Shown in pieces: positions 16,425 to 61,448 of a DNA stretch of 64,000 nucleotides. Origin of the DNA: Haliotis rubra. Its lineage: Eukaryota. The stretch's first letter is position 1, and each line of letters begins with the position of its first letter. The notes beneath the pieces are model-generated. The model saw only the letters and a list, made by a program, of their open reading frames with translations, was not told where the DNA came from and made no database searches. A program made the translations under genes and the position numbers. Where the stretch lies: contig NW_025765015.1 of NCBI RefSeq assembly GCF_003918875.1, positions 310,001 through 374,000 of the forward strand, read 5' to 3'.

Positions 16425-16466
16425 ATTCCCCGATAAAACCCATACCCCGCCAAAGCGCCTACGATA

Positions 16467-16601
16467 CAAGGTGTTGGTCAAGGCTGTGTTTTGTCAGCTT
16501 GGTTATTTTCATTGTATATTAATGACCTATTATACGCACTGCAAAGATTACAACACGGTGTAAGTATTCCATGGGGTAATGTGCCAGGTATCTTATTAGC
16601 A
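16467..16601 (+). pseudogene. Non-LTR reverse transcriptase fragment
   Basis: Translates QGVGQGCVLSAWLFSLYINDLL..GILLA (RT motif, broken before the DD). Confidence 0.7.
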
Positions 16602-21014: not shown

Positions 21015-21172
21015 AGTGAGTGAGTATGGTTTTACGCCGCATTTAGCAATAGTCCAGCAATATCCTGGGGACACCAGGAATAGGCTTCACACATCGTACC
21101 TATGTAGCGCATCGAACATGGGTCTTCGGCGTGACAAACGAACGCTTTAACCTTTACACTACCCTGCCGCCC
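21015..21172 (-). mobile_element. SINE family S1
   Basis: Reverse-complement homolog of 10548-10714. Confidence 0.75.
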
Positions 21173-21204
21173 CTATTTACCTACAAAAGTATGTTTCATT
21201 CATT

Positions 21205-21557
21205 GTTGGTTTGTTTGTTGTTTAACGCCGCACTCAGCAATATTCCAGCCATTTGGCGGCGGTCTGTAAATAATCGAGTCTGGACCAGACCACCCGATCC
21301 CGTATTTGCCGTTCACAACAGACCCGTGAAGGTCCGGGTTAGAATTGATCTTCAGTAACCCATGCTTGTCGTAAGAGGCGACTAACGGGTGGTCAGGCTC
21401 GCTGACTTGGTTGACACATGTCATCGTGTCCCAATTGCGTAGATCGTTGTTCATGCTGTTGATCCCTGTATTGTCTGGTCCAGACTCGATTATTTTACAG
21501 CCACATAACTGGAATATTGCCGAATGTGGCGTAAAACTAATCTCACTCACTCACTCA
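21205..21557. mobile_element. Two S3 copies (partial minus, full plus) just upstream of the paralog B ATG exon
   Basis: 21205-21290 (-) and 21322-21557 (+). Confidence 0.75.
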
Positions 21558-21665
21558 CCTTTTACGACAAACGTGGTTTGGTGAAGTCAAACTCTAACCC
21601 GGATCTTCACGGGTTCGTTTCATTGATACATTGCGTGTTATCATTACAGATTTCCAGTGCAACAA

Positions 21666-24600
21666 ATGGAGGGAGTGTTCGTATTTTTAGGTATGGAAGT
21701 ATGCAACGGTTTATACAACATAGTGATGGTTTACTTAGTTTTATCGTCACGATATGACTGAAATATTGCCGATGTGACGTTAAATATGAACTCACTCACT
21801 CACTTAGTTTTATGTTACGTAGCATTTCAAACAGGCTTAAGCTTTACTGAAATTTTCAGTTTGTGTACGTTTCAAAACGAAATTCCGTTAGAGATCGGAA
21901 CATTGACAGTGACTTGAAAATGCTTGGATGTTATTAATGAGAGATGGATATATTGTAGTTACCACTGTATTACGTTTGGTTATTAAGTACTGTCTGTGTT
22001 ATTTTGTTAACTGACTGAACGTAATGATCAAACCTTCAATTCAAATTTTTAGTGATTTGACAATGAAATGCTTTTTATTGACTGTACTTTGTATTCAGCA
22101 TATATTATATATTGTATTTAGTATCTCTCATTTGGATCTGTGATGCATCAAACAGTCAAGATGACGCCTCGCAATTTCTGACAACACCGTAAGTATCACA
22201 CAATAGTTGGAATGAAAGCAGTATCAGATACATATCCTGTAGAAAAATGAACAAAGGCGTTGTATTTCAGCCCCAAAGATTCTGTTGTCTCGGCATGTTA
22301 CACATTGAGCTGTCATGTACTAGTATAGTAAGAAATGAATGGTTTGGCAACACTATCTAACACTAAATAATTGTAGCTTTCCGTCAAACATTACGTCAAT
22401 ACGTGACTTTTCGCTTATGAATATGTGTGGTTCGTTTCTTCTATTTTCAGTGTAATATTATGGCAAGTGGTCGAACTTGACATAACTTTGAAAAAAATAA
22501 ATTTCTCATGTTGTTATTCCGGTATGATCTATAAATGTGTTAATGTGACTTTTCAGACAATGCAAGCAATGTGTGTGTTCAGTTTGTGCCAGCGTTGTGT
22601 CCCAAGGTAGTTTTATTATTTATCAAAGATGAATAGTTGGAATCTGATCATTTGACCCAGGAAGAAGAAGGTAGCACAAGCTACCTACAACTTAACTCAA
22701 AACATAACGCATCTTAATTAATGAGGATTACTTCATAAAATCCACTTGGAGTTTAAGTTTGTCTTATATAGGCTTTGCTCTTCCATTTTCATCTCAGGCG
22801 GTGTCCTTCACAGAGGAAGAAACATTGTAAACACATATCTCAGGTGACGGTACGTCTTGTTATGGGTGGATAGAATGTCGTTGTCGTAGAAACTGTCGAA
22901 CTGCAATCAGAGAATGTTTGGCAAACAAGTGTCGAGATTGGTACGCCGTGCATTTGCCATGATGTTTGTTTATCCTAGCTTATATATATGTGTGAACACA
23001 TCTCACACATAAATTGGTGATCCAGTAGGTGAACACACGTCACACATAAACTGGTGATCCAGTAGGTGAACACATCTCACACATAAATTGTTGATCCAGT
23101 AGGTGAACACATCTCACACATAAATTGGTGATCCAGTAGGTGAACACATCTCACACATAATTTGTTGATCTAGCAGATGAACACATCTCACACATAAATT
23201 GGTGATCCAGTAGGTGAACACATCTCACACATAAATTGGTGATCCAGTAGGTGAACACACCTCCTACATAAATTGGTGATCAACTAGGTGAACATATCTC
23301 ACACATAAATTGGTGATCCAGTAGATGAATACACCTCACACATAAATTGGTGATCCAGTAGGTGAACACACCTCACACATAAACTGAAGATCCAGTAGGT
23401 GAACACTTCTCACACATAAATTGGTGATCCAGTAGGTGAACACACCTCACACATAAATTGGTGATCCAGTAGGTGAACACACCTCACACATAAACTGAAG
23501 ATCCAGTAGGTGAACACTTCTCACACATAAATTGGTGATCCAGTAGGTGAACACACCTCACACATAAATTGGTGATCCAGTAGGTGAACACATCTCACAC
23601 ACGTTTCACCTGTGAGTACTTCAGATTTATTAGACAAGTAATGTGAAGTAGGGTTTAGACGTGAAGTACATATCCTCTCTTACTTATTGGACCTGACCTA
23701 AAATCTACAGACACAAAGTTTCAAAACATTTGGAAAATGTATGGCTGTTCATATCACAAACAATGCATGACGGGCATATTGCATTATGTTTGACAGGCGT
23801 TTCTTAGATGAAACCAACCAGGCTCTATTTTAACACCTTCTCTGTTACACTGTAATATCAGCAAATCGGTAAGATATTTATACCATTATCTAGCAGACTT
23901 TGTGTAGAAACATCGCTATTACAATAAAGAAACTGTTATGCGTTTGTCTAATTTGACTGCAGTTAATTCATTGCAAACACATTTCTTTACACAGACGCCA
24001 AGAGAGTCCTGGTAAACAGCAGACAGACACTCATGCATACCTAGGACCAGTACGTCAAGATTTAATATCATTATTAGATATTCTCAAGCGAATTGCATTT
24101 GATTGTGTAACGTTTAATCTTAACGTTCTTCCCATAGACCATCTGGTTTAATTCTGGTTTCATTACAGCTTTACTTGTAAACTACTCTTCTTTTCTGTAA
24201 TAAAAAATAATAAATCTTATGCAATGGGTTTTACTTTGCAATTTCAGAAATCTCCATATAACTACTGAATGGTTACTTGGCTTATATCTCTATCCTTAGG
24301 GTCATACCAGCGACTCATCAGACAAGAACAAAGGAACAAATGAAAAGACTTCTTCAGTTCCCGACCTGGTTAAAACGTCCGTAGAACCTGCTGCTGGTGA
24401 GTACGCGATCATCTCAGAGCCTGCAGACGTAGGAGACTACACGGAAATTACAGAAGACATCTCTGGGGCAGCGGCAGGGGTCTCCATGACAACAGCAAGT
24501 CATGGGATGACCACACTGGATGGACGTAAACCAGAAGACGCTGCAGACAACCTTGCTGGTCAATACAACAAACTGGGGGAGTCTATAAATCTGACCATAA

Positions 24601-25106
24601 CCGATGTTCAGGCCACCTACAACAGGTTGAGGGACAATAACTTGGCCAGTGCCCATCTCCGGCAAACTGGTAATGGATCATCAGCAGAATATTTCGTCCT
24701 GGAAGAATCTGATGGCAACTACAACAGACTAGGGCAAGCTGCTCCCATCACTACGACTGATGCCACGAGTGGCTATCACAGACTTGGGGACACAGCCGAG
24801 GCTGGAAGTCCTCAAGCCAAGGACACTGAAGCGCCACCACCCGATTACTTCGTCCTAGAGGAACCTGCAGACACGTACAACAAACTTGGAGTTACTGTTG
24901 CTGCAACTGAGATGGCTACAAAGAACACCTATCACCGATTGGAAAACACTGATGTTGATACAGGGAACAGGGATCCAGAACCTTTCGAAACTGTGCTTGA
25001 AAAGTCAGGTGACAGCTACAACAAACTTGGAGAGAAAACGTCTGCTGAAGAAGCACACGGCACGTACAACAAACTTGGAGAGGTCACTTCCGAGATCAGA
25101 ACCTGA
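21666..25106 (+). CDS. Receptor paralog B: signal peptide, Cys microexons and intact Tyr-motif tail; no stalk/TM exon found (possibly truncated or pseudogene)
   Basis: Exons 21666-21690 (MEGVFVFL), 22122-22188 (VSLIWICDAS..), candidate Cys exons 22557-22606 and from 22798, juxtamembrane exon 23995-24049 (RRQESPGKQQTDTHAYLGP), last exon 24300-25106 open for 268 codons with 12 YxxL/I motifs. Confidence 0.6.
22992..23601. repeat. 37-bp minisatellite, ~16.5 copies
   Basis: GTGAACACATCTCACACATAAATTGGTGATCCAGTAG with period 37. Confidence 0.95.
24300..25106 (+). CDS. Terminal cytoplasmic exon of paralog B (ITAM-like motifs)
   Basis: Acceptor TCCTTAG|G at 24299, in frame with ORF 24486-25106; YAII-x8-YTEI, YFVL-x6-YNRL, YFVL-x6-YNKL. 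Confidence 0.8.
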   Translation, partial: GHTSDSSDKNKGTNEKTSSVPDLVKTSVEPAAGEYAIISEPADVGDYTEITEDISGAAAGVSMTTASHGMTTLDGRKPEDAADNLAGQYNKLGESINLTITDVQATYNRLRDNNLASAHLRQTGNGSSAEYFVLEESDGNYNRLGQAAPITTTDATSGYHRLGDTAEAGSPQAKDTEAPPPDYFVLEEPADTYNKLGVTVAATEMATKNTYHRLENTDVDTGNRDPEPFETVLEKSGDSYNKLGEKTSAEEAHGTYNKLGEVTSEIRT

Positions 25107-26988: not shown

Positions 26989-27057
26989 GTATGCAGATAC
27001 TTAAATATTATTTTTCCTGTGATATATTTCCTTCCCTGTACGATTACATGGACATTA

Positions 27058-27976
27058 GTGCATCACCAAATGCATTACGCAGTGCATCATCACTCAATGC
27101 ATCACACAGTGCATCACCACCCAATGCACCACCAAGTGCATCATCACCCAATGCATCACCAAGTGCATCATCACCCAATGCATCACCCAGTGCATAATCA
27201 CACAGTGCACCATCACCCAATGCATCACACAGTGCATCATCACACAGTGCATCATCACCCAATGCATCACACAGTGCACCATCACCAAATGCATCACCAG
27301 TGCATCACCCAGTGCATCATCACCCAATGCATCACCCAGTGCATAATCACACAGTGCATCATCACCCAATGCATCACACAGTGCACCATCACCCAAATGC
27401 ATCACACAGTGCACCATCACCAAATGCATCACACAGTGCATCATCACCCAATGCACCACCCAGTGCATCATCACCCAATGCATCACCCAGCATCATCACC
27501 CAATGCATCATCACCAATCATCACAGTGCATCATCACCCAATGCACCCCATGTGATGCATCACCCAGTGCATCACCCAGTGCATCATCACCCAATGCATC
27601 ACCCAGTGCATAATCACACAGTGCATCATCACCCAATGCATCACACAGTGCATCATGCACACCAAGTGCATCATCACCCAATGCATGCATGCATCACACA
27701 GTGCATCATCACCCAATGCATCACACAGTGCATCATCACACAGTGCATCATCACCCAATGCATCACACAGTGCACCATCACCAAATGCATCACACAGTGC
27801 ACCATCACCAAATGCATCACACAGTGCATCATCACCCAATGCACCACCCAGTGCATCATCACCCAATGCATCACCCAGTGCATCACCCAGTGCATCATCA
27901 CCCAATGCATCACCCAGTGCATCATCACCCAATGCATCACCCAGTGCATCATCACCCAATGCACCACACAGTGCAT
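27058..27976. repeat. CAT/CAC-rich minisatellite
   Basis: AGTGCATCATCACCCAATGCATCACAC-type units. Confidence 0.9.
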
Positions 27977-28025
27977 CCCGGAGTAAGGGCACAGTCAAAG
28001 AAGGATCGCAATGTCTGGCGTCCTG

Positions 28026-28132
28026 GGTGCCGTTGTTCAAAACAACCTTAGCGCTAAGGCTACCTTAAGTCAGTGTTAAAGTATGGGAGTTACGGTCACC
28101 TTAGTGCTAAGATCGCTTTGTACAACGGCACC
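28026..28132. mobile_element. Harbinger-like MITE
   Basis: ~35-bp imperfect TIRs GGTGCCGTTGT..CCTTAG; CTG 3-bp TSD. Confidence 0.65.
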
Positions 28133-33682: not shown

Positions 33683-36600
33683 ATGAAAGCTTTACACCTA
33701 TTTTTAGGTAATTACTTTATTCTTGATAGAATTGGTTATTACGTAATTCATGTAAATTCTTTCTCTAAGATCTAACATCCCCAAGGTCAAAGATGTGATG
33801 TGAGGGGAAATTGGGTTTAACGTCGAGCTTGAGAATATTTCGCTCATATGACGACGTGCATGCGTGTGTATGTGTATTTGCGGCTGCTTGTACTAGCCCA
33901 GACTGAAGCTGGTTTTATGGTGCTAGCCCACTGAGATACCATGCCGCAGTGAAGCATGAATACCCCACTCAGACACATATACTGACTCCGAGCCGACCAG
34001 TCCTTCTGTACCCATTAATGCCGAGCGCCAGGCAGGGACCAACAAGTACCATATATTAACGTCTTTTTGGTATGACGCGGTCGGGGATCGCACCCGCGAC
34101 CTTACGCTCTCCGGGCGGATGCTCTAACCAGTACACCACGGAGGCGGTCCAAGGTCAAAGAAACCATGGAACAAGTAGTAAAGCAAACACATGTAAACAC
34201 TATTTGAAATGTAATAAATCAATATCACCTATGCTTTTCTGTTTTGGAAGAGTAAACTTGTTGGTAGTAGTAATCTACAGTCACTTGCTCACTTCAGGCT
34301 GACACGATCATGGATCAAATCAAACTCATGTCAAACATTAATGATGCACGTTGATATTGTTACATTTGTGCAGTGCTATTTATCTCATGACATAATATTT
34401 ACTCTGTGTAGTGTGTGCAGTCATTGTAGGCTGGATCCCCTGCGGATGTGCAGTACGTACGTCAAAGTAAGTAGAACACTTAATGCTGAAGTTACAATAA
34501 TGATAATAATACAGGAAATTTATATAGCGCTAAATCCAACCACTAAGTGGGTGCTCAAAGTTAAAATTTAATGGTCTAATGACAACCCAGCCAAACAATG
34601 CACTTCTTATCGCCAATACACCAATCACATAAAGTCAACCCATTCTTGGAACCAAACGTTAGTTTCTAGGATAGTTAACATATTTACAGACAGACAGACA
34701 GATGATTTTATTTGTATGAATGGCCATGAGGCCAACAGTTACATCGACATTCATAATAGTAAAGAGTCCGGACATTGATTCACATATAAACTGTATGTGA
34801 TGGTACTTTTGTACAATACACAGCTAAACGTACTAGTATATAAGCTGATTTTGAATTCAGAAGAGTAACGAACTTGTGATAGTTGGGGTTGGAGTAGTAA
34901 TAACATGGTAGATATTTTTTCCGTAGATCGTTGTACAATGGACATTCTAGTAATACGGGATATTCATTTTCTAACTTATCAAGGCAATGTGGACACTTGG
35001 CAATTGCGATATCTGCACTTTTCGATCTTCTGTATAATTGTATGTTAAAACCAGCAATACCACATCGAAATTTTGTCAGTGCTCTACGCAGATGAGCAGA
35101 GGGCAAGACTCGAAGGTAAGTTTCCGGCATTACATCAAGTTTATAGGTTGAATATGTGCATAAATATTAGGAAGCAGTCACGGTAGCTGACCACTCTTGA
35201 TAATAAACATCTTTACATCTTTGTGTGAATATACACGTGAACAATTCTTTATTACCTACGTCTTGGTTCAACCAAGCATAAGACAAGCCATGCTGGAACA
35301 ATAACTCTCGCACTGCTGAGGTCCAATTAATATCTCCAGAATCATCTAAACGTTTTAACATGAGATACGATCGTTTCGAAATGCGAGAATCAGGCTGTCT
35401 GGGCAACCGAATCCAGTATGATATTACTCTAGCTTTGTAATTTACATGCAGTGGATATCGTCCACACTCAGCTAGGATAGCTTTTGTGGGTGAGCGGTAA
35501 CCAATTCGTAAGACAAATGTACAAAAATTTGAACATACCTTTTCCAATGTTGTGGCGATACACTGTTCCCCAGATTTCTGCCCCGCACAATGGGATAGGT
35601 TGGATTTTTCCATCGAATATTTTAAAAGCGATGTCTGGAAGCACTGATTTATAGGTGCAGATAAATTTATTGATTGGATACAGAGCCTTCTCGGCTTGCT
35701 TAGATGAAAAAAACCATCACAAGCTTTAGAGAACATATTTCTACATGACAAAGTTAATCCCAAATATTTGTAATAATTGACAGTTTCAAGTTTCTCATTA
35801 GCAATGTACCACTTTTCATGCTTTGATACTGTGCCACCTTTTCTAAACACTACGACCTTAGTCTTGTCGGTATTTATAGAGAGTCCCCACTTCTTGCAAT
35901 ACCTTTCTAGAATATACATTTTCTTTTGTAAATTTATAACATTGTCCCCAAATATTGCAACATCATCGGCAAACAGGAGAATGGAGAGTGCGTTGACAGC
36001 TTCGTCAATAAATGCACCACTGTGATCGCTGTTCACAATATCTTTAACAAGTTCATCAATATATAGAATGAATAGAATACGGGATAAAATGCAACCTTGA
36101 CGGACTCCTGTCGTACAATTAAATACCTCGGTCATTGTTTGCTTACTACACCGAACAGCAGACTTAACGTTTGTGTACATATTACGAAGCAAGGTGTTTA
36201 TTTTACCATATAGGCCATTATTTAGGAGAACCGAAAGCAGTTTACTTCTATCCACTGTATCAAAAGCCTTCTTGAAATCGACGAAAATACAATAAAATTT
36301 GCCGCCTTTCTTTCTGATATATTTATGTTATCGTTAACATATTTACCATATATGTATTTGTTTTGCTCTCTTTTTTGACAATGAATTGTTTGGTTCCACT
36401 ACACTGTAGTGTTGGAATACAAATTTTTAGGAATCCTCGAACAACAATACCCGTACCATGAGGGTAGTTTGGTAAGGATAAACAATAATTTCAGCCTCTG
36501 TTCAGATCAATACATAGTGGAATGTACTTGTAACCCCCTTGTTGTTATCAATTCATTTAAATTTAAGAGACATTGTTTTGCAGTCTACATCTAAATCATC

Positions 36601-39600
36601 AAATACTAAAGTTCATTTCTGTTCACTGATGAAAACTAAATTTACGTCATGTTTTCATAAACCCACGATTTCCTCACTTGGTGGTTTTTAAAGTGATTTA
36701 AAAAGCATAACTAAAAGCCATACGTTTTAGGACAGAGTTCACTGTTGTACGCCTTTGTCCATGCTCCACACTCCACTGTCCAGAACAACATAACACGTGA
36801 ACAAGTGCTAATGTTTTTGGTGTGTTTAGAATCCTGCTGGCCCAATTAATCTTTTACAGTTCGCCCCCTTTCCTGCTCCATTTTTAACATTCATTTGACT
36901 GCACTGATGAGACGCAATGGGAGGGTGTATGTTGAAATAGTTCCTCTTTTGCGTGAATCGTAACAAAAAGTTAAAATGTCATTTACATATTTTGCGTATT
37001 AATTTAGTAGTTTCTGTTTTTCCTCTAAAGGTCGTTTGGTAAAGATTTATGCATTATTTTTTTCTCGTAAACATAGAACACAAAGCATGTCATTCGTCTT
37101 TACAGGTGTTTCTGCAAGAGAAACAAACGTAAGTATAAAACTATGAAGTTTAAATCAAGGTGATTACAAAATGACTTGAGTAATAAATGCTTCATATCCT
37201 TTAATCAAATCTATGTACAAAGATGACATAAAATCGCAATACCACAACACACGTAATATAATGCGTTTTACTAAAATACATCAACAAAGTTCTATGTTTT
37301 CGCAGATAACCGTACATGTACATGCAACTGGTCTCGAGGTTCCTTTTACTGTATCTCAAATAATTGCAGGTAAGCGTTCAAGTCTCTAAGACTTGCAGGT
37401 ATGGTTCTATGGTAAAGTGCATTTATGGTTCCCGTTGGCGTATGACTTGTTCAAAGTAATTGTTTGAACTACCATAAGCCTCCAAGATGACTTGAGATAA
37501 AGTTTTCATGATAACAGCCTTGATATCTTTGTCATTTAGCGCATGGTGCTTTATCGTGTGATCAATAACATTTCTAAAATTCTGGAAACTCTTGCTTGAT
37601 AGCCTTAGTAGCGAAACATAACATTATAACAAGTTTGTTTGTGTTTGTATTTTTAATGTGTATAAATATATTTCATAAGACAAACACACTTCTCGTTAAG
37701 CCTTCATGTCTTACAACGACAATACGTAGAAATGTTAAACAATGGAATCTTTTTACCTACTGTGCAGATGTCCACCAAGGTGCAGTGTCTGTTGTAATAT
37801 TTGTGAGTATTACACAGTACATGAGTTGACCTTTCTTCAAGTATTATTAATTTTATCACACCATTCGAACTTCTTCAGTTCACCACTACGTTTAACAGCT
37901 CAAGATGACTTCTTATACACCCTTTAGAGAGGTTTAACAAATGAAGAAATAGGAAGTACATGGCGGGGACAGTTTGCATGTTTATATATTGTGAAGGTGA
38001 ATATTTTATGTGACATATTATTGTATAGAGCTATATCCGAATTACTCGTAACTTTCAATTGAAAGATGAAAACATTCAAAATACAACTACAATATCCATT
38101 GATATCCAAATCGGAACAAAAACAACAACATGTCACGTTACGACACAAGGGGCAACCACAGCTAAACATGTCGCTACGACCACCGATCCAGCCAATACTA
38201 CAAGAGCCACTTCTACCACCTCTTCAACAACAACTACACGTGTTATCACGACCACCGCATCTACAACTTCACATGCCACATCGACCAACAGAAGGACGAC
38301 GGATGCTTATTCACCTACAGATGCCGAAATGTCACCCGTTACAACTACACATAGGGATGTTTCTGGAACAACAACGGACCACACTGGTAAGACTCAAGCT
38401 TAGTGGCGTAAATTCCCTGTTTAGAGATATCTAAAATGAAACATGAGATTTATACAAGCCCATTCATTCTTTCCGAACCGTAACATAACTACAAAACTGA
38501 CAAAGATGGATTCAACCAACACCCACCAATTATTCCGTTTTTTTCGGCAGATCGGAACCCTCGTGGACCCTCGTCGGCGTCTTATAGCTCGGTAGCAGGA
38601 GTTGGAGGTGTGATCGGAGGTGTCATCATCACTGTCTGCATTGTTGTGCTGTGGCGCTGCTATCGCTCTCGACAAATGTATGGTATATTTCAACATCACA
38701 TACCCCAACTACAACATAATACTGAGTATAACTGTTACGCCTCTTAGTGTCACGAGTAATACCACGGTATATCAGCTACATGTTGGCGGAAATACTCAAA
38801 TAATATTGGTGAATTGTACGACCACAGGTATGCTTGTGACAAAACCTGAAATATAAACTTTCGTATCTTTGGTTCGAACCATCAACCACGTTTTGGCACG
38901 AGATTCTACACTGCATATTTGTAGCATGGAATAATCTATTCTATCATTTCAAGATGGAAATAATATTGTTTGCTATATATATAAACTACACCATATCATG
39001 AAAATTACTTCTCAGTAACAGACAGACAAACGGAGAAGAGGGAGAGAAGAAAGAGTCGAATACAAGCTTTGGATTAGTAAGTTTGCATCTATTCACGTGT
39101 ACATATTACGTATGGGTGGATTACTGGATGGATGCGAGTCTGCATGCGTGCGTGCGTGCGTGCGTGCGTGTATGCGTGCGTGCGTTCGTTCGTTCGGTCA
39201 CACATTCGAAATTTACTCTACACTTACGATATATTAATTTGGATGTAATCTGCACAATTTCTTCCGATGTCTTCGGAATTAAAAGGTTTCAATATATATT
39301 TAAGACTTTGTTGTGCTTCAATGATTTGTCATAACAGAAAGTAGGAAGATGATAGTTATCTACGTATCCATTCCAGACCCAGTACCGGTCTGTGTTACAT
39401 ATGTGTAGGTTGGATTGATGATATGCAGAAATCTCAGTCCACTTGATTCAGCTGTGAAAACAACACATAAACCACACAGCATAACAAATACATCTGAAGC
39501 TAACACAGCTTTTTGTTTTCAGGATCCCACAACGTCGTCAGGGAGAAAACCCGACCCAGTCCCAGTCCCAGTCCCAGATATTATCAAGATATCTACTGGA

Positions 39601-40689
39601 CCAGGTATTGGCGCGGCGGAAAACGTGTATGATGTGGCCAACGATGAGGAAAACCACACCGTGGGGAATGAGCCTGCTGGTGCAGACCACGGACACTATG
39701 AGGACATAACAGATGGAATACCAGGGGCAGCTGTGTTCTCTGTGTCCAAAACAACCCCGGGGAAGAAGCCTGCTGCTGGAGACCACGGACACTATGTGAA
39801 CATAACAGATGGAATACCAGGGGCAGCTGTGAACGCCCAGGACACAAAGTCACAACCACCTCTGGAGAAAGTTGACCCAACAGAGGGAGACTACAACAGA
39901 CTGATCCGAGACCACGCCACTCACATCAGGATGTTTGCACACGACAAATATAACAGGCCGGGAATTAAGGAAACTTGTGGCCAACCCAAAGTCAGCGGTC
40001 CATCAGCAGAGTATTTTGTCCTGGAGAAGTCGGACGCCGTCTACAACAAACTAGGAGACAGTGCTACGACCACTAGTGGCCAACTCGATATCAGCGGTCC
40101 ATCAGCAGAGTATTTTGTCCTGGAGAAATCAGACACCGTCTACAACAAACTAGGAGACAGTGCTACGGCCACCACTAGTGGCCAACTCGATATCAGCGGT
40201 CCATCAGCAGAGTATTTTGTCCTGGAGAAGTCGGACACCGTCTACAACAAACTAGGAGACAGTGCTACGACCACTAGTGGCCAACTCGATATCAGCGGTC
40301 CATCAGCAGAGTATTTTGTCCTGGGGAAATCAGACACCGTCTACAACAAACTAGGAGACAGTGCTACGGCCACCACTTGTGGCCAACTCAATGTGAGCGG
40401 TCCATCAGCAGAGTATTTTGTCCTGGAGAAATCAGACACCGTCTACAACAAACTAGGAGACAGTGCTACGGCCACCACGACTGATGTGAAGAATACCTAC
40501 CACCGACTTGGGGACACCGCACCTGACATCTACAGCAAACTTGAAAAGCAATACTGTGTTGAAGAGGCACAACGAACCTACTGTAAACTCGGGGAGGCGA
40601 CATCCACCATCTACGACAAACTTGAAGACAAACACTCTGTCGGGAACAAACAAGGAACATACTGTAAACTCAAAGGAGCGACAGCCTAG
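33683..40689 (+). CDS. Receptor paralog C: signal peptide, 10-Cys mini-domain, Thr-rich mucin stalk, TM and ~390-aa tail with 5 tandem ITAM-like units
   Basis: Fully phase-consistent exons 33683-33707 (MKALHLFL), 34412-34466 (VCAVIVGWIPCGCAVRTS), 37106-37128, 37306-37369, 37768-37802, 38066-38386 (Thr-rich), TM 38551-38677 (VAGVGGVIGGVIITVCIVVLWRCYR), 39016-39076, 39523-40689. Confidence 0.85.
33794..34148 (-). mobile_element. SINE family S2
   Basis: Homologous to 10867-11223; 13-bp TSD CCAAGGTCAAAGA. Confidence 0.85.
34688..36332 (-). mobile_element. 5'-truncated LINE (CR1/L2-group-like) in intron 2 of paralog C
   Basis: RT motifs FVDFKKAFD, GVRQGCILS, LFADD, YKYLG; C-terminal CxxC..C; AATAAA and (TCTG)n tail; 14-bp TSD GTTAACATATTTAC at 34674-34687 and 36333-36346; disrupted frame. 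Confidence 0.9.
39523..40689 (+). CDS. Terminal cytoplasmic exon of paralog C
   Basis: Acceptor TTTTCAG at 39522, in frame with ORF 39415-40689; 18 YxxL/I motifs. Confidence 0.85.
   Translation, partial: DPTTSSGRKPDPVPVPVPDIIKISTGPGIGAAENVYDVANDEENHTVGNEPAGADHGHYEDITDGIPGAAVFSVSKTTPGKKPAAGDHGHYVNITDGIPGAAVNAQDTKSQPPLEKVDPTEGDYNRLIRDHATHIRMFAHDKYNRPGIKETCGQPKVSGPSAEYFVLEKSDAVYNKLGDSATTTSGQLDISGPSAEYFVLEKSDTVYNKLGDSATATTSGQLDISGPSAEYFVLEKSDTVYNKLGDSATTTSGQLDISGPSAEYFVLGKSDTVYNKLGDSATATTCGQLNVSGPSAEYFVLEKSDTVYNKLGDSATATTTDVKNTYHRLGDTAPDIYSKLEKQYCVEEAQRTYCKLGEATSTIYDKLEDKHSVGNKQGTYCKLKGATA
39994..40480 (+). repeat. Coding tandem repeat, alternating 99/102-bp units x5
   Basis: Unit starts 39994, 40093, 40195, 40294, 40396. 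Confidence 0.95.
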
Positions 40690-41299
40690 AAATCAGGATC
40701 TGTACTCCCTTGTTGTCCAGAGTCTGATAGGATCAGACAATTTATTCACACAGTAGTTTATTTTTTTCTAAATTCTTAGCCATGTATCATGCAAGCAAAC
40801 CATTCTTCCTGGTGAATCTTGGAACTTGGTATACAGACTGCAGAATATAGTTTTGGATTTGCAATATGACTACCGATTCAAATGTGCTCTCGTCTTCTAT
40901 TATTCGTGTGGGGCATATTTAGTTAGATTGGTCTTTGTTCTGGAGTTACAATTTAGCGTCACATCGGCTATATGTCGGGCCTATATCCATGTAAAGCGGT
41001 CAACAGTGTGTTCAAATAGTCAGTTAGTCTAAAGAGTCAATATAACAGTCGCAATCTAGGGACATGTCCACAGTGCATAGTAACTGTTTCCAAAGTAGTT
41101 TCTTTCAATCTATACAATGCACCAATAGTAGGGGAAATACTTATTATTAATAATACTTATTGTAACTATAGGAAAATACAGCAATGTCTGGCAATGTATT
41201 CAGTAAAACAAAGTGATTTTTAGTGGTGTGGACATTGCAAAGACAAGAATCACCAGACACGTAACGCACGTGCAAGGGTTCGTGTGGCAGATTTACTAC

Positions 41300-46560: not shown

Positions 46561-49500
46561 TAATAGTTCTATTATATTTTCAGGGGCAGATAGAGGGAGA
46601 AAAAGAGACAGGTAATATTGTTGTCTTCGGTGCAACCTGTTGGTGTAGGTGTTTGTTTCCACATATGCCTGTTTTAAAACTGTTCACCCTATACTCGTCA
46701 TAAGTTTAATTTAGTGTTTGATTTCGTTGGCCTTGAACGCCCGACTGTGATGTTGATGGGTTTCCTGAAATATCAGGGCCGCCATTGAATGGTGTTATTT
46801 GTTTTGTTATTTTGCTTGTTTTGTTCATTTCATATGTTTTATGTTTTTTGTTTACATTGTATTTGCTGTTTGGGAGTGGGGAGTGTGTGATCTTTTTTTG
46901 TTTTCTAGGAAGGGGAGGTATTTGTCATATTGGGACTTGGGGTGGGATTGAGAGAGTGTAATTTATCTTGAATGAATATTCACGAAAAATTTCGCGATTT
47001 CTGTTTGAAGCAATAATTTTGAATATCGAGTAAAAGGGAAGTTTGCAACACATAATCTTGGTTATTTATTTGCTGTAGATCTGGCCGCAGCTGCCCTCCT
47101 TCTCCACGTAAGTATAACCATTTATTACTTACCACTGATATTCTTTTGGTGGCAGGGGTGAGCAGTGGGGACGGGGGTGCCGATAACATTATTTTGTCAC
47201 ATCGGTTTTTACAATAAACTGTTATCTAAACAGAATCGCGCATGGTATCAACGTCTTTGTTAAACATCCCAGAGTGGGTGAATGAGTTGACAAAAACCTA
47301 GTATGTTTACAAATCATGTTTATCTACATTTTGATTAAAACGACCAATGTCTAACCTTTGTGTAAAAATTGACTGTATTGATTTTTCCATCACATGGGAT
47401 AAATAAACTCTGTCAAAAAAAGAAACGCAACCCCTGTATTTTAGAGATTTTGATCTGAAGTTTTAGGACGACACGGCATTTTTATTATTTAAGACAGAAG
47501 TCTGAAATTTGGCAGAATAATAACCCAGATGGGCATGTTTAAAATTGTCATTTCAAAAGTCATCTCACAGACACCAGTTTGTCACCAGGGGGGCGTCTTT
47601 CTCAGTATCTCGTATGAGCACCACGCGCTGCAATCACTGCACGGCATCTCCTTGGACAAGAACGGATAAGACGCCGGATTCTTTCCTGGGGGAATGGCTC
47701 TCCACTCCTCCTGCAGTGCAACGGCGAGCTGTTGCAGCGTCTGTGGCGGCGGCTGACGTTGACGTACGCGTCGATCCAGAGTATCCCACAGGTGTTCAAT
47801 AGGGTTGAGGTCTGGTGATTTAGAGGGTCATGGCAAGACATTGACGTTGGAATTCTGCAGAAAGTTCATTGTTGCACGTGCAGTATGAGGCCGGGCGTTG
47901 TCCCGTTGAAAAATCTGTGTCTGTTGGTCAATAATCGGGAGAAGGTGAAGCTCTAACACGTGGTTGATGTAACGTTGGGCTGTCAGGTTCCCTGGAACGA
48001 TCACCAAGTCTGATTTCTGGTTGTATGAGATGGTTCCCCAAACCATGACGCTTTCTCCGCCAAATCTGTCCACCTGTCGGACGCAGATGGGCGCAAAACG
48101 TTTATGACGTCTCCCATACAGACGCTGTCTTCCGTCGTGACGTTGCAAAAGAAAACGTGATTCATCAGAAAACCAGATTCGCCTCCAGTTTTGTAAAGTC
48201 CGTATCCTTACGTTGTTGCACCACCTGAGTCGTCGGCGTCGATGTAGGGGCGTAGTACAGGTCCAACAACTGGTCTACAGGCACGTAAACCCGCTTCTTT
48301 CAGACGGTTCCTAATCGTTTGAGCTGACACTCTCCTCAAACCTGGTATTTGTGTGGCAGTTACGGTTGGTAGGGCATGCCGATTACGCAGGTGATGGACC
48401 CGGATGTACCGATCTTGAAGGGGGGTCGTGATTCTTGGCCTTCCACTTCTCGGGCGATCGTTGGTCAAATTGACGTTGTTGTAGCGGCTCCAAAGTCGGG
48501 ATATCGTTGTTTTGTGAACATTTAGGTGCCGTGCAACAGTTCCAAAACTTTCTCCGGCTTGAACACGACCAATGGCGATATTTCGGTCGGCAGCACTCAA
48601 TCGTGGCATTTTAACACAGCTTTTCGGCGACAAATGAATGAATATAATACGGAAGCACATGGGCTTTTATACACCCCTACATTAACTGCCATTTTCATGA
48701 TTTGCATGTGTTTTTTTTGTGCGAAGTCACCATGAGGGTCATTTCATGCGTTGTGACGGAATAAGCAATAAAATACACTTATGCGTACAAATGCAGTTGT
48801 TTGGATGGTCATCTTCATTAATTACGTGTCTCATTTCAATACATTCGAATAAAATTTAGTTTGGAAGCAATAACTTCATTCAAACGAATTTTTCATATCT
48901 GAGGACAGGGGTTGCGTTTCTTTTTTGACAGAGTTTATTTCAATGTCCAAACAATTAAGGATCTTATTATAATGTCAATTATCATTAACAGGTCACAATT
49001 CAATTCTGGACTCACAAAAGTCCAGTAACTCTCCGCATTGTGGACACTTTCTGACAAGGGATTTAACCAAATTAAACATGCAGTTGTCATGAACATATGT
49101 CAAGGATGAAAAAATGAAAACAATTTTTTTCGAAAACTCAAAATTTAAACTCGCTCGCCCATGGGCCGGCACATTGGCGAGAATGTTGTTTGACTCAGAA
49201 TTCATGTTTTGGAGGTTGTAAATGAAAGAATGTATGTTTATACGTATCATGACACAAAATTCAACTCATTTTGACTTAATTCGGCTAATTTAGAGCGATA
49301 TTTAATACTTGTTTTTTAAGGAAATAGAATTATTAGATCAATTTTGAGCAATATGTTTTGTAATAGATAAACGGGATTATAAAATTGTAGTATAAATTAG
49401 CAATTGCGATTGTTAGTGGCTGTATCCTGAAAGGGGGCTGAAGTATCGTAAAATTATGGTCCTCCTAAGAGGGCACGTAAGTCCCAAAATTATCATTAAA

Positions 49501-55500: not shown

Positions 55501-56358
55501 GACTGATCAGTATTCTTTCCCACAGGTTGTTCTCAATATCCACTTCATTGGTTAATACCTGTAATTTTGTGGATGTAAATCTATAACTCACCATTCATAT
55601 GTAATGCCTTCCTTTCCCAGATTTACACCAACAACCCCAGCAGTTTGGTGATGTCCACAGTCCCGGATGTAATCATGGTGTCGCCAGCGCAACTCGCCCC
55701 CAATGAGGCGGAAGCTGAGTATAATGTTATTCAAGAGGAAGAAAATTACCAGTTGGCAAAGAAGATGGTTTCTGCCTCTAAGCAGGCAGATTACGCAGAA
55801 ATCCCGGACACACAGAAGAGCGGTACATCACAACCTGCTGCTGAATATTTTGTCCTGGAGGAAGATGGCCACACAAGTGACGATTTAAACAGACTAAGAA
55901 ACGCTGCGACTCCGACTGGAGGAAAGGATACATACAACAGACTGGGAGACGACACTGCTTCGACACCGACTGATATGAAGGGTACATACAACAGACTGGG
56001 AGACGACACTGCTTCGACGCCGACTGATATGAAGGGTACATACAACAGACTGGGAGACGACACTGCTTCGACACCGACTGATATGAAGGGTACATACAAC
56101 AGACTGGGAGACGACACTGCTTCGACGCCGACTGATATGAAGGGTACATACAACAGACTGGGAGACGACACTGCTTCGACGCCGACTGATATGAAGGGTA
56201 CATACAACAGACTGGGAGACGACACTGCTTCGACGCCGACTGATATGAAGGGTACATACAACAGACTGGGAGACGACACTGCTTCGACGCCGACTGATAT
56301 GAAGGGTACATACAACAGACTGGGAGACGACACTGCTTCGACGCCGACTGATGTATAG
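46058..56358 (+). CDS. Receptor paralog D: microexon ectodomain, Thr-rich stalk, TM and tail with 8x 18-aa YNRL repeat; N-terminus unresolved
   Basis: Phase-compatible exons 46058-46089, 46584-46611, 47079-47107, 50621-50648, 52867-52895, 53167-53340 (Thr-rich), TM 53600-53717 (VVGGAVGGLVGGVAITVILFLLWRFFR), 55180-55237, 55621-56358. The frame stays open past the TAG to a TAA at 56478. The 5' microexons are less certain than the 3' half. Confidence 0.72.
46478..46557. repeat. (TG)n(AG)n microsatellite
   Basis: Direct observation. Confidence 0.95.
47406..48935 (-). mobile_element. Tc1/mariner DNA transposon, copy 1 (DD34E-type, defective)
   Basis: TA flanks; TIR AACTCTGTCAAAAAAAGAAACGCAACCCCTGT; HTH, FSDESRF, QRDNARPH, SPDLNPIEHLW; frameshift and TGA in the WPSKSPDL motif. 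Confidence 0.95.
49491..49700. mobile_element. MITE / foldback with ~85-bp inverted arms
   Basis: TATCATTAAAATATTGACACAGTTCAC..GTTCGAGAA mirrored at 49622-49700. Confidence 0.85.
50783..52436 (+). mobile_element. SINE family S2 split by a Tc1 insertion
   Basis: tRNA-like head at 50785, (CACCT)n tail, TSD TAAGGCACC. Confidence 0.85.
51020..52292 (+). mobile_element. Degenerate Tc1-like transposon nested in a SINE
   Basis: TIRs TAGTATGACCAGAAATTATTGAGAATTT / AAATTCTCAATAATTTCTGGTTGTACTG with TA flanks; FSDES, FQQDNDPKH, WPSYSPDLNPIENVW. Confidence 0.9.
53767..53932 (-). mobile_element. SINE family S1
   Basis: 14-bp TSD GGCATGATGGTAGA. Confidence 0.85.
55621..56358 (+). CDS. Terminal cytoplasmic exon of paralog D
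   Basis: Acceptor CTTTCCCAG at 55620, in frame with ORF 55645-56358; YNVI, YAEI, YFVL and 8x YNRL. Confidence 0.82.
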   Translation: MYTNNPSSLVMSTVPDVIMVSPAQLAPNEAEAEYNVIQEEENYQLAKKMVSASKQADYAEIPDTQKSGTSQPAAEYFVLEEDGHTSDDLNRLRNAATPTGGKDTYNRLGDDTASTPTDMKGTYNRLGDDTASTPTDMKGTYNRLGDDTASTPTDMKGTYNRLGDDTASTPTDMKGTYNRLGDDTASTPTDMKGTYNRLGDDTASTPTDMKGTYNRLGDDTASTPTDMKGTYNRLGDDTASTPTDV

Positions 56359-56376
56359 GATACATACAACAGATTG
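55930..56376 (+). repeat. Coding 54-bp tandem repeat x8 plus the start of a 9th
   Basis: TYNRLGDDTASTPTDMKG; starts 55930, 55984 .. 56308, 56362. Confidence 0.95.
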
Positions 56377-56464
56377 AGTACAATCGATCAGGACAATAAA
56401 GACATTAAACAACCGGAACCAAACGGACGGGAGCAGATTACTTCTGACCAAGTTATACCCTCAG

Positions 56465-57110
56465 ACACCAAGTTCTAATCTCCGTACACCAAGATTTACC
56501 CTCTAACACCAAGTTTTAACCTCTAACACCAAGTTCTAATCTCCATACACCAAGATTTACCCTCTAACACCAAGTTTTAACCTCTAACACCAAGTTCTAA
56601 TCTCCATACACCAAGTTTTACCCTCTAACACCAAGTTTTACCCTGTAACACCAAGTTTTAACCTCTAACACCAAGTTCTAATCTCCATACACCAAGATTT
56701 ACCCTCTAACACCACGTTTTAACCTCTAACACCAAGTTCTAATCTCCATACACCAAGTTTTACCCTCTAACACCAAGTTCTAATCTCCATACACCAAGAT
56801 TTACCCTCTAACACCAAGTTTTAACCTCTAACACCAAGTTCTAATCTCCATACACCAAGTTTTACCCTCTTACACCAAGTTCTAATCTGCATACACCAAG
56901 TTTTACCCTCTAACACCAAGTTCTAATCTCCATACACCAAGTTTTACCCTCTAACTTCAAGTTCTAATCTCCGTACACCAAGTTTTAACCTCTAACACCA
57001 AGTTTTACCCTCTAACACCAAGTTCTAATCTCCGTACACCACGTTTTAACCTCTAACACCAAGTTCTAATCTCCATACACCAAGTTTAACCCTCGAACAC
57101 CAAGTCCTAC
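56465..57110. repeat. 20/21-bp minisatellite in the 3' region of paralog D
   Basis: ACACCAAGTTCTAATCTCCAT / ACACCAAGTTTTAACCTCTA units. Confidence 0.92.
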
Positions 57111-59809: not shown

Positions 59810-61333
59810 AACTCTGTCAAAAAAGAAACGCAACCCCTGTATTTTAGAGATGTTGATCTGAAGTTTTAGGACGACACGGCATTTTTATTATTTAAGACAG
59901 AAGTCTGAAATTTGGCAGAATAATAACCCAGATGGGCATGTTTAAAATTGTCATTTCAAAAGTCATCTCACAGACACCAGTTTGTCACCAGGGGGGCGTC
60001 TTTCTCAGTATCTCGTATGAGCACCACGCGCTGCAATCACTGCACGGCATCTCCTTGACAAGAACGGATAAGACGCCGGATTCTTTCCTGGGGAATGGCT
60101 CTCCACTCTCCTGCAGTGCAACGGCGAGCTGTTGCAGCGTCTGTGGCGGCGGCTGACGTTGACGTACGCGTCGATCCAGAGTATCCCACAGGTGTTCAAT
60201 AGGGTTGAGGTCTGGTGATTTAGAGGGTCATGGCAAGACATTGACGTTGGAATTCTGCAGAAAGTTCATTGTTGCACGTGCAGTATGAGGCCGGGCGTTG
60301 TCCCGTTGAAAATCTGTGTCTGTTGGTCAATAATCGGGAGAAGGTGAAGCTCTAACACGTGGTTGATGTAACGTTGGGCTGTCAGGTTCCCTGGAACGAT
60401 CACCAAGTCTGATTTCTGGTTGTATGAGATGGTTCCCCAAACCATGACGCTTTCTCCGCCAAATCTGTCCACCTGTCGGACGCAGATGGGCGCAAAACGT
60501 TTATGACGTCTCCTATACAGACGCTGTCTTCCGTCGTGACGTTGCAAAAGAAAACGTGATTCATCAGAAAACCAGATTCGCCTCCAGTTTTGTAAAGTCC
60601 GTATCCTTACGTTGTTGCACCACCTGAGTCGTCGGCGTCGATGTAGGGGGCGTAGTACAGGTCCAACAACTGGTCTACAGGCACGTAAACCCGCTTCTTT
60701 CAGACGGTTCCTAATCGTTTGAGCTGACACTCTCCTCAAACCTGGTATTTGTGTGGCAGTCACGGTTGGTAGGGCATGCCGATTACGCAGGTGATGGACC
60801 CGGATGTACCGATCTTGAAGGGGGGTCGTGATTCTTGGCCTTCCACTTCTCGGGCGATCGTTGGTCAAATTGAAGTTGTTGTAGCGGCTCCAAAGTCGGG
60901 ATATCGTTGTTTTGTGAACATTTAGGTGCCGTGCAACAGTTCCAAAACTTTCTCCGGCTTGAACACGACCAATGGCGATATTTCGGTCGGCAGCACTCAA
61001 TCGTGGCATTTTAACACAGCTTTCGGCGACAAATGAATGAATATAATACGGAAGCACATGGGCTTTATACACCCCTACATTAACTGCCATTTTCATGATT
61101 TGCATGTGTTTTTTTTGTGCGAAGTCACCATGAGGGTCATTTCATGCGTTGTGACGGAATAAGCAATAAAATACACTTATGCGTACAAATGCAGTTGTTT
61201 GGATGGTCATCTTCAGTAATTACGTGTATCATTTCAATACATTCGAATAAAATTTAGTTTGGAAGCAATAACTTCATTCAAACGAATTTTTCATATCTGA
61301 GGACAGGGGTTGCGTTTCTTTTTTGACAGAGTT
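59810..61333 (-). mobile_element. Tc1/mariner DNA transposon, copy 2 (near-identical to copy 1)
   Basis: Same TIRs and TA flanks; ORF 60266-61105; same W->TGA stop. Confidence 0.95.
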
Positions 61334-61448
61334 TATATACACACATGTGGAGTGTAAGTCAATCGTTTCTATTAGAAATAATATATATTTTGTTATTAAC
61401 GTAAAAGGGTTAATGGTCAGTTTATTTTAGGGTATAATGGTATAATAT

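What the first reader, a model, noticed from the sequence alone, without database searches (positions are those of the whole stretch)
39994..40480. ITAM cassette amplified as a higher-order tandem repeat in paralog C
Seen: five copies of SGPSAE-YFVL-(E/G)KSD(A/T)V-YNKL-GDSAT (exact YxxL-x6-YxxL). Unit lengths alternate 99/102/99/102 bp, and diagnostic AAGTCG (units 1, 3) vs AAATCA (2, 4, 5) implies a 201-bp dimer was duplicated. An upstream duplicate pair also gives YEDI and YVNI (pYxN is a Grb2-type site). Inference: signalling strength may be tuned by VNTR-like ITAM copy number.
Basis: partly seen in the sequence, partly recalled or inferred. Interest (0 to 1): 0.72.

Follow-up and report, generated by a model that had tools for sequence, protein, structure and literature searches.

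The report
Amplified two-tyrosine cassette in abalone receptor tail
An unannotated abalone membrane-protein gene carries five recent, in-frame tandem copies of a short two-tyrosine motif that fits the pattern of immune-receptor activation motifs, but nothing yet shows that the motif signals or that its copy number varies between animals.

Summary
Five in-frame units start at 39994, 40093, 40195, 40294 and 40396, spaced 99/102/99/102 bp. Three characters alternate between odd and even units, which fits duplication of a 201-bp dimer. Each unit encodes YFVL-x6-YNKL.

The window is Haliotis rubra (blacklip abalone) DNA. The array lies in the last coding exon (39523-40689) of an unannotated gene. 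That exon splices in frame to a juxtamembrane exon, a transmembrane exon and a threonine-rich mucin-like exon. The 5' end is unresolved.

The gene belongs to an abalone-only family with no Pfam domain. Its neighbours in the window are paralogs. The two-tyrosine cassette is the family's signature: 28 instances, most with both tyrosines at x6 spacing. Amplification of tyrosine modules recurs in other members.

Two North Pacific abalone sequences have only one unit, broken by a shared 2-bp deletion. The fivefold array is therefore lineage-specific.

The motif-level ITAM match is real: seven strict matches in this tail. Phosphorylation, Syk binding and copy-number polymorphism remain untested. Short-read contigs cannot count the units.

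My reading is a multivalent tyrosine-motif docking tail. This is a new variant of a known kind, of moderate interest. The scan has flagged ITAM-like pairs in other abalone genes.

The parts
38059..38386 (+). Threonine-rich, mucin-like ectodomain exon of paralog C. The 5' boundary and the upstream signal-peptide exon are unresolved. The donor is CTG|GTAAGA at 38386/38387.
   Evidence: An open T-rich frame is present. Against H. asinina, all five indels inside the exon are multiples of 3, unlike those in the following intron, and the donor is conserved. The exon joins the next exon in frame.
38551..38677 (+). Transmembrane exon. It encodes a glycine-rich helix (VAGVGGVIGGVIITVCIVVLW) followed by the basic stop-transfer RCYRSRQ. 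The donor is AAT|GTATGG.
   Evidence: Translation. The exon is conserved in H. asinina and H. rufescens.
39016..39076 (+). 61-nt juxtamembrane exon (NRQTNGEEGEKKESNTSFGL). Acceptor CTTCTCAG|, donor TTA|GTAAGT.
   Evidence: tblastn similarity to the juxtamembrane segment of family members P0005, P0009 and P0020. It is the only acceptor/donor combination that restores the frame between the TM exon and the tail exon. It lies in a block conserved with H. rufescens.
39523..40689 (+). Terminal coding exon: a 388-codon cytoplasmic tail ending in TAG at 40687-40689. The acceptor has a strong polypyrimidine tract (TTTTGTTTTCAG|).
   Evidence: ORF, splice site. Contigs of a run guessed to be RNA, from a close relative, cover 39536-40953 but none of 39300-39527.
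39658..39831 (+). Older 96-bp-spaced duplicate pair carrying YEDI and YVNI.
   Evidence: 78 nt, 90% identity. H. asinina also has two copies (YVDI, YVDM). H. rufescens and the DRR299178 contig have one copy.
39973..40478 (+). Five-unit tandem array of 99/102-bp units, organised as a 201-bp dimer repeated. Each unit encodes AEYFVL(E/G)KSD(A/T)VYNKLG.
   Evidence: In an independent short-read run, contigs whose sequence occurs twice in the assembly show 1.4-2.7 times the flank depth.
40498..40623 (+). Two further non-repeated ITAM-like pairs with x7 spacing (YHRL-x7-YSKL and YCKL-x7-YDKL), followed by a final YCKL.
   Evidence: Motif scan. The first pair is conserved in the H. rufescens copy (YHRL-x7-YYKL).

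Best explanation
Paralog C is a single-pass (type I) membrane protein of an abalone-specific family. It has a mucin-like ectodomain, a glycine-rich transmembrane helix and a long cytoplasmic tail built almost entirely of YxxL/I modules. AlphaFold2 confidence for the tail is low, and I take it to be largely unstructured.

Shown here:
- In the H. rubra lineage, the family's signature two-tyrosine cassette (acidic-YFVLE-x5-YN[K/R]LG) was amplified to five copies. Unequal exchange first made a 99/102-bp pair of units, then duplicated the 201-bp dimer.
- Together with two older x7 pairs, the tail now carries seven ITAM-consensus sites.

Inferred:
- When the receptor is clustered, Src-type kinases phosphorylate the tyrosines. 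The tail then acts as a multivalent docking scaffold for SH2-domain proteins.
- Paired sites suit tandem-SH2 readers of the Syk/Shark or SHP-2 kind.
- More cassettes would mean higher valency and stronger or more cooperative recruitment.
For: Repeat anatomy.

Topology and gene model: four 3' exons join into one open frame of 560 codons, with a TM helix followed by basic residues.

Origin: protein P0002 (H. rubra LOC124287857) maps at 97-100% identity to window 5447-25103.

Family:
- All credible relatives among 1.84 billion representatives are from Haliotis or from unnamed Logan contigs.
- No Pfam domain reaches its cut-off.

The cassette is a conserved linear motif:
- There are 28 instances across paralogs and species, most with both tyrosines at x6 spacing.
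- In four orthologs of paralog B, motif columns are invariant in 54% of cases against 27% elsewhere (Fisher p = 5e-4).
- Nearly all tyrosines in the tail sit in YxxL/I context.

Recurrent module amplification in the family:
- Paralog D has a 54-bp unit x 8.3 copies at 97% matches.
- H. rufescens P0005 has a higher-order array of YNRL modules plus cassettes.

Lineage specificity: H. rufescens and a DRR299178 contig each have a single unit.

Tail structure: AlphaFold2 with a 15-sequence alignment gives mean pLDDT 47.8.

SH2 readers in this genome: Csk-, SHP-2-, PLC-gamma- and Src-type genes were seen.

A working ITAM-Syk axis in a mollusc is published: oyster CgIgR binds CgSyk through its ITAM (PMC6994640).

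Likely transcription: contigs of a run guessed to be RNA begin 13 nt inside the predicted exon and cover none of the intron.
Against: - There is no direct evidence of phosphorylation or of any binding partner.
- A Syk/Shark-type gene was not located in my partial scan of this genome.
- x6 is the shortest spacing the ITAM consensus allows. From my own knowledge, classical ITAMs mostly use x7-8.
- Non-tyrosine positions (F, V, L, E, N, G) are as conserved as the tyrosines.
- Some family copies keep the VLE core but lack the first tyrosine (FETVLE, PPLEK), or lack the second (ADTKLG, TSNKLA).
- Paralog C did not appear in any protein search, and no gene is called over its H. rufescens orthologue.
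- Its start codon and signal peptide were not found.
- Its orthologue in the North Pacific clade is frameshifted inside the cassette.
- AlphaFold2 places weak beta-hairpins (pLDDT 55-75) on the repeat units.
Confidence: 0.6

Rival explanations
1. The array is evolutionary noise. Paralog C is a decaying or dispensable gene copy, and the five units are an ordinary minisatellite expansion that happens to sit in an old coding exon, with no effect on signalling.
For: - C did not appear in any protein search, and no gene is called over its H. rufescens orthologue.
- No start codon or signal peptide was found, and the best candidate exon is not conserved in H. asinina.
- H. rufescens and DRR299178 share a 2-bp frameshift inside the cassette.
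- One low-depth contig of another individual shows a 1-bp deletion at 39546.
- A unit length divisible by 3 is inherited from the first duplication, so it is not evidence of selection.
Against: - The tail frame is open for 388 codons, and four exons join in phase.
- Indels against H. asinina in the mucin exon are all multiples of 3.
- The indel seen among individuals is an in-frame 6-bp one.
- Contigs of a run guessed to be RNA cover the exon but not the intron.
- Paralog D and H. rufescens P0005 show the same kind of in-frame module amplification, P0005 in an annotated gene.
Confidence: 0.2
2. The YxxL/I motifs act unphosphorylated as YxxPhi sorting signals read by AP-2-type clathrin adaptors, or as LIR-type [F/Y]xxL motifs flanked by acidic residues. 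The tail would then drive endocytosis, recycling or autophagic routing of a mucin-like surface protein rather than kinase signalling.
For: Both YFVL and YNKL fit YxxPhi, and AEYFVLEE fits the acidic-aromatic-x-x-aliphatic LIR pattern. This is motif inspection read against established consensus definitions. The hydrophobic VLE core is kept in copies that lost the tyrosine.
Against: - One sorting signal normally suffices, so 18 are not expected.
- The strict pairing at x6 or x7 and the conservation of both tyrosines across paralogs are not explained by sorting signals.
Confidence: 0.12
3. The repeated units fold into a beta-hairpin repeat domain in the cytoplasm. The tyrosines would be structural rather than docking sites.
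For: AlphaFold2 puts a strand-turn-strand on each unit (EYFVLEKS / VYNK), with the best confidence in the protein at pLDDT 55-75. The alternating hydrophobic pattern Y-F-V-L favours beta structure.
Against: - Overall confidence is low (mean pLDDT 47.8, pTM 0.37, no residue at 90 or above). From my experience, sheet-like models of tandem repeats are a common artefact of this method.
- Most family members carry only 1-3 scattered cassettes, separated by unrelated linkers. That suits linear motifs, not a repeat fold.
- Only 25% of residues are order-promoting.
Confidence: 0.05
4. The five copies are an assembly expansion in a Nanopore-based hybrid assembly, and the true allele has fewer units.
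For: The published H. rubra assembly came from about 30x Nanopore reads plus Illumina polishing (PMC6774278). No short-read contig spans the array.
Against: - In an independent short-read run, both junction types are present as contigs.
- Contig spans that occur twice in the assembly have 1.4-2.7 times the flank depth, while spans that occur once have about 1 times.
- Units carry distinct substitutions (E to G, S to C, DI to NV) rather than being identical copies.
- A 0.5-kb array is easily spanned by long reads.
Confidence: 0.03

Closest known systems
ITAM-bearing signalling chains: CD3-zeta with three ITAMs, FcR-gamma, DAP12, Ig-alpha/beta. In molluscs, oyster CgIgR, whose ITAM binds CgSyk (PMC6994640).
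   Same: - Cytoplasmic location after a single TM helix.
- An acidic residue before the first Tyr.
- Paired YxxL/I at x6-7 spacing.
- Several pairs in tandem on one chain, as in CD3-zeta.
- The oyster ITAM begins GDYTEL, close to this family's conserved GDYTEI site.
   Different: - No sequence homology to any of them.
- Seven consensus sites on one chain instead of one to three.
- x6 spacing in the amplified cassette.
- Flanking residues are conserved as strongly as the tyrosines.
- The ectodomain is mucin-like or a novel cysteine-rich domain, not an Ig domain.
- No binding data exist.
Transmembrane adaptor proteins (LAT, PAG/Cbp, NTAL) and transmembrane mucins with signalling tails (MUC1).
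   Same: - A single TM helix followed by a long, low-complexity tail studded with tyrosine motifs, which would work as a multivalent SH2 docking scaffold.
- One juxtamembrane cysteine (WRCY).
- A threonine-rich ectodomain, presumably O-glycosylated, as in MUC1.
   Different: - No CxxC palmitoylation motif.
- The ectodomain is not minimal.
- No SEA domain and no other Pfam domain.
- No homology.
Draper / CED-1 / MEGF10 engulfment receptors, the invertebrate ITAM-like signalling route through Shark/Syk.
   Same: An invertebrate single-pass receptor whose tail carries an ITAM-like pair.
   Different: No EGF or EMI domains, no NPxY motif, and no homology.
Variable-number tyrosine-motif repeats in bacterial effectors (Helicobacter CagA EPIYA segments, Chlamydia Tarp repeats).
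   Same: Tandem amplification of a short tyrosine-phosphorylation module, where the copy number is known to change SH2-partner binding strength. This is the only well-studied precedent I know for tuning by repeat number.
   Different: Those are secreted bacterial proteins. Here the repeat is in a host membrane protein, and no copy-number variation within the species has been shown.

Membership tests
ITAM (immunoreceptor tyrosine-based activation motif) | Two YxxL/I motifs separated by 6-8 residues (loosely up to 12) | tested here: met
   There are seven strict matches in the tail: five YFVL-x6-YNKL, one YHRL-x7-YSKL and one YCKL-x7-YDKL.
ITAM (immunoreceptor tyrosine-based activation motif) | Acidic residue shortly before the first tyrosine | tested here: met
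   E or D sits at -1 in 5 of 5 units and in nearly all family cassettes.
ITAM (immunoreceptor tyrosine-based activation motif) | Located in the cytoplasmic part of a membrane protein | tested here: met
   The TM exon, with a basic stop-transfer sequence, joins the tail in frame through a 61-nt exon. Family members with full models have a signal peptide, ectodomain, TM and tail. The signal peptide of paralog C itself was not found.
ITAM (immunoreceptor tyrosine-based activation motif) | Both tyrosines and their spacing conserved among homologues | tested here: met
   Most of 28 cassettes keep Y-x9-Y geometry (x6 between motifs) across paralogs and four species. Seven lack one tyrosine or the second motif, and two use x9. 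Motif columns are twice as conserved as linker columns.
ITAM (immunoreceptor tyrosine-based activation motif) | Tyrosines phosphorylated by Src-family kinases on receptor engagement | not testable with these tools
   Src-type kinase genes exist in the genome. Phosphorylation itself needs an experiment.
ITAM (immunoreceptor tyrosine-based activation motif) | The doubly phosphorylated motif binds the tandem SH2 domains of a Syk/ZAP-70/Shark kinase encoded by the same organism | tested here: inconclusive
   The SH2 and tyrosine-kinase scans of the genome gave Csk-, SHP-2-, PLC-gamma- and Src-type loci but no Syk-type locus among those inspected. Oyster has a functional Syk (PMC6994640).
ITIM / ITSM | (I/V/L/S)xYxx(L/V/I), or TxYxx(V/I), with the -2 residue conserved | tested here: not met
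   The -2 residue is A before the first Tyr. Before the second it is T in units 2-5, but A, G or D in unit 1 and in other family cassettes.
Transmembrane adaptor proteins (LAT/PAG type) | Very short ectodomain, juxtamembrane CxxC palmitoylation site, multi-tyrosine tail | tested here: not met
   The multi-tyrosine tail is met. The ectodomain is at least 109 residues of mucin-like sequence, and there is only a single juxtamembrane Cys.
Draper/CED-1/MEGF10 | EGF/EMI repeat ectodomain and an NPxY motif | tested here: not met
   No Pfam domain was found in any family member, and there is no NPxY in the tail.

The most novel reading that the evidence does not exclude
The abalone-specific family consists of genuine multi-ITAM (Syk/Shark-coupled) receptors or adaptors. 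Their signalling valency evolves by minisatellite dynamics. The cassette number in paralog C, and the module number in paralog D, would be polymorphic within H. rubra and H. laevigata populations and would change response strength. That would be a natural invertebrate counterpart of engineered ITAM-number tuning.
Probability: 0.15. Interest if true: 0.8.

Novelty: new variant of a known kind. Interest (0 to 1): 0.5.

Why it matters
Tyrosine-motif tails are how many immune and engulfment receptors pass signals into the cell. The number of such motifs on one chain is known to set signal strength in vertebrate and engineered receptors.

Here a lineage-restricted invertebrate receptor family appears to change that number by simple repeat expansion. 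One species has one broken copy and another has five intact ones. Sister genes have expanded different modules.

If the motifs are truly phosphorylated and the copy number varies among animals, this would give a natural system for studying how motif valency is tuned by evolution. It might also give a marker for immune variation in a farmed, disease-prone mollusc.

If not, it is still a clean example of how disordered signalling tails are built from duplicated linear motifs.

Tried and rejected
- **Pfam scans.** Scans of the tails and of full-length family members found nothing above cut-off, only sub-threshold matches to TM segments.
- **ESM Atlas look-alike search.** No usable hit.
- **Word search for orthologues.** A search with the non-repeat half of the tail found none.
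- **H. asinina copy number.** A search for an H. asinina orthologue of paralog D, meant to reach that species' copy of the array, found none. H. asinina's copy number stays unknown because locus L003 ends before the array.
- **Other weak matches in the genome.** Matches of the tail elsewhere in the genome are translated non-coding satellites, not paralogs.
- **Signal-peptide exon.** Weak tblastn and an ATG/hydrophobicity/donor scan gave candidates at 32497 and 34341. The better one is not open in H. asinina. The short ATG-containing piece at about 37957-37995 is only partly conserved. I rejected all of them as unproven.
- **Direct splice from TM exon to tail exon.** Rejected because the phases do not fit. 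A 61-nt intermediate exon solves it.
- **Syk hunt.** Tandem SH2 hits turned out to be Csk-, SHP-2-, PLC-gamma- and Src-type genes.
- **Literature.** No paper on ITAMs in Haliotis, and none on variation in tyrosine-motif repeat number in invertebrate receptors.
- **Copy number from short-read contigs.** Not resolvable. Contigs break in the array, and an in-register deletion allele would create no new 31-mers.
- **Joined protein model.** Exons were searched by reference, and the join was only frame-checked locally.

Full report
**Observation**

The region holds a real tandem array. Tandem Repeats Finder reports 39973-40478 either as period 102 x 5.0 copies (93% matches) or as period 201 x 2.5 copies (95%, no indels). 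The repeat finder shows 201-nt copies that are 97% identical in register and 67% out of register.

An exact anchor at the unit start occurs at 39994, 40093, 40195, 40294 and 40396. The spacing is therefore 99/102/99/102, and every unit is in the reading frame of the exon.

Three characters alternate between units:
- AAG or AAA.
- TCG or TCA.
- Absence or presence of a GCC codon.

Units 1 and 3 carry the first state of each. Units 2, 4 and 5 carry the second.

Unit 1 differs from unit 3 by one base and unit 2 from unit 4 by five. Units 2 and 5 are identical over their first 83 nt. One duplication of a 99+102 dimer is the simplest history.

Each unit encodes AEYFVL(E/G)KSD(A/T)VYNKLG, an exact YxxL-x6-YxxL. 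The upstream duplicate (39658-39735 and 39754-39831, 90% identity, 96 bp apart) gives YEDI and YVNI.

**Where the window comes from**

Protein P0002 is named by NCBI as an uncharacterized protein of Haliotis rubra, LOC124287857. It maps to window 5447-25103 in nine pieces at 97-100% identity.

The window's genome has 1,378,282,171 bases in 2855 contigs. This matches the published blacklip abalone assembly of 1,378,265,264 bp in 2,854 scaffolds, built from Nanopore and Illumina data (PMC6774278).

**Gene context**

The array lies in a 388-codon open frame, 39523-40689, behind a strong acceptor. Three more exons lie upstream:
- A threonine-rich mucin-like exon ending at 38386.
- A transmembrane exon at 38551-38677, with a glycine-rich helix followed by RCYRSRQ.
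- A 61-nt juxtamembrane exon at 39016-39076.

The juxtamembrane exon resembles the same segment of family members P0005, P0009 and P0020. It is also the only combination that restores the frame.

The four exons join into one open frame of 560 codons.

Against H. asinina, all indels inside the mucin exon are multiples of three, while those in the next intron are not. The start codon and signal peptide were not found. The topology makes the tail cytoplasmic.

**Family**

Searches of 5.8 billion and 1.84 billion proteins gave credible relatives only from H. rubra, H. rufescens, H. cracherodii, H. asinina and unnamed Logan contigs. The remaining hits are low-complexity. No Pfam domain passes its cut-off in any member. 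Paralog C itself was not returned by any search.

Full-length members such as P0005 show a signal peptide, a cysteine-rich ectodomain, a mucin stalk, a glycine-rich TM helix and a long tyrosine-motif tail.

**The cassette**

The unit amplified in paralog C is the family's signature. It occurs in 28 instances of the form [A/S][A/D][E/D]YF[V/A]LE[E/K]-x4-5-YN[K/R]LG across paralogs and species. Most have both tyrosines at x6 spacing.

In four collinear orthologs of paralog B, motif columns are invariant in 54% of cases against 27% elsewhere (p = 5e-4). In the tail of paralog C, 18 of 21 tyrosines are followed by L or I at +3. With one unit counted, the figure is 10 of 13 (p = 5e-9).

Two further non-repeated pairs with x7 spacing follow the array. 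The tail therefore has seven strict ITAM-consensus matches.

There are counter-signals:
- The non-tyrosine residues of the cassette are conserved just as strongly as the tyrosines.
- Some copies keep the VLE core but lack the first tyrosine, or lack the second.
- x6 is the lower edge of the consensus.

**Evolution**

In H. rufescens (locus L001) and in an independent Logan contig from run DRR299178 (L022), the orthologous exon has a single unit. A shared 2-bp deletion in the T-run of the YFVL codons shifts the frame, and the old frame stays open downstream. These species also keep an upstream YFIL-x9-YNRL site that H. rubra and H. asinina have lost.

H. asinina shares the YxDI duplication, but its locus ends before the array.

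Module amplification recurs in the family:
- Paralog D carries a 54-bp unit (TYNRLGD module) x 8.3 copies at 97% matches.
- H. rufescens P0005 has a duplicated higher-order block of four YNRL modules plus cassettes.

**Reads**

Logan contigs of four coded runs were laid on 39300-41000.

In a DNA run of the same organism:
- Contigs that occur twice in the assembly have 1.4-2.7 times the flank depth.
- Contigs that occur once have about 1 times.
- Both junction types are present. The multi-copy array is therefore not invented by the assembler.

Contigs break inside the array and no joints were seen, so the exact number and any polymorphism stay open.

A closely related organism (about 4% divergence in the 3' UTR) also has unit-to-unit junction contigs. 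A small run of that organism, guessed to be RNA, covers 39536-40953 but nothing of 39300-39527. That fits an exon start at 39523 and transcription.

Among individuals there is an in-frame 6-bp indel in the (PV)n stretch at 39555. One contig at depth 5 has a 1-bp deletion at 39546.

**Structure**

AlphaFold2 with a 15-sequence family alignment gives mean pLDDT 47.8 and pTM 0.37. The repeat units score 55-75 and are drawn as beta-hairpins. I read this as a largely unstructured tail and keep a folded repeat as a minor rival.

**Readers of the motif**

The genome encodes SH2 proteins of Csk, SHP-2, PLC-gamma and Src types. In oyster, an Ig-domain receptor binds Syk through an ITAM (PMC6994640), so the pathway exists in molluscs.

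**Verdict**

The anatomy is confirmed, and the higher-order origin is well supported. The most likely function is a multivalent phosphotyrosine docking tail. Strict ITAM/Syk signalling has perhaps a 30% chance.

The claim that copy number is VNTR-like and tunes signalling is untested. What is shown is a difference between lineages: one broken unit against five intact ones.

The gene is unannotated with an unresolved 5' end, so a dispensable or decaying gene remains a serious rival. I class it as a new variant of a known kind, of moderate interest.

Earlier notes of this scan flagged ITAM-like pairs in other abalone genes. Follow-up there also found real, conserved motifs without functional proof.

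Noticed in passing
window 55924-56373: The tail exon of paralog D carries its own recent in-frame expansion: a 54-bp unit (KGTYNRLGDDTASTPTDM) x 8.3 copies at 97% matches. Here the Y-to-Y spacing is 18 residues, so it is not ITAM-like. A non-coding 41/61/102-bp satellite follows directly at 56447-57105.
   Followed up: partly
L001:5155-5225 and L022:~600-700: The orthologue of paralog C in H. rufescens and in a Logan contig of run DRR299178 has a single cassette. A shared 2-bp deletion in the T-run of the YFVL codons shifts the frame. The old frame stays open downstream to the ancestral stop.
   Followed up: yes
window 39546 and 39555: There is an in-frame 6-bp indel in the (CCAGTC)n / Pro-Val stretch. 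It is present in three runs and absent in the window and in run X4. One contig at depth 5 of another individual has a 1-bp deletion in an A-run at 39546. It would shift the tail frame, or it may be an error.
   Followed up: no
window 47416-48938 and 59819-61336: Two 99-100% identical copies of a Tc1/mariner-type element lie 12.4 kb apart in direct orientation. The transposase ORF is at 60266-61105 on the minus strand. This means either a very recent transposition or a segmental duplication.
   Followed up: no
window 38551-38677; P0005 residues ~280-305: The family's transmembrane helices are rich in GxxxG / glycine-zipper patterns. They give sub-threshold Pfam matches to ErbB1 and EphA2 TM segments. 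This suggests helix-helix dimerisation.
   Followed up: no
window 22881-23731 and 27019-28068: A 37-bp satellite of about 23 copies lies inside the last large intron of paralog B. A strongly skewed CA/His-codon-like simple repeat lies between B and C (GC skew -0.3).
   Followed up: no
window 34780-36255 (minus strand): A LINE-type reverse-transcriptase ORF of 362 aa plus a 116-aa ORF is inserted upstream of paralog C's known exons.
   Followed up: no
window 23975-24051: Paralog B has a small juxtamembrane exon (RRQESPGKQQTDTHAYLGPG), equivalent to the 61-nt exon I found in C. The tyrosine in B (HAYLG), also seen in P0009 (HTYLG; P0005 has Cys), is Phe in C (TSFGL).
   Followed up: partly
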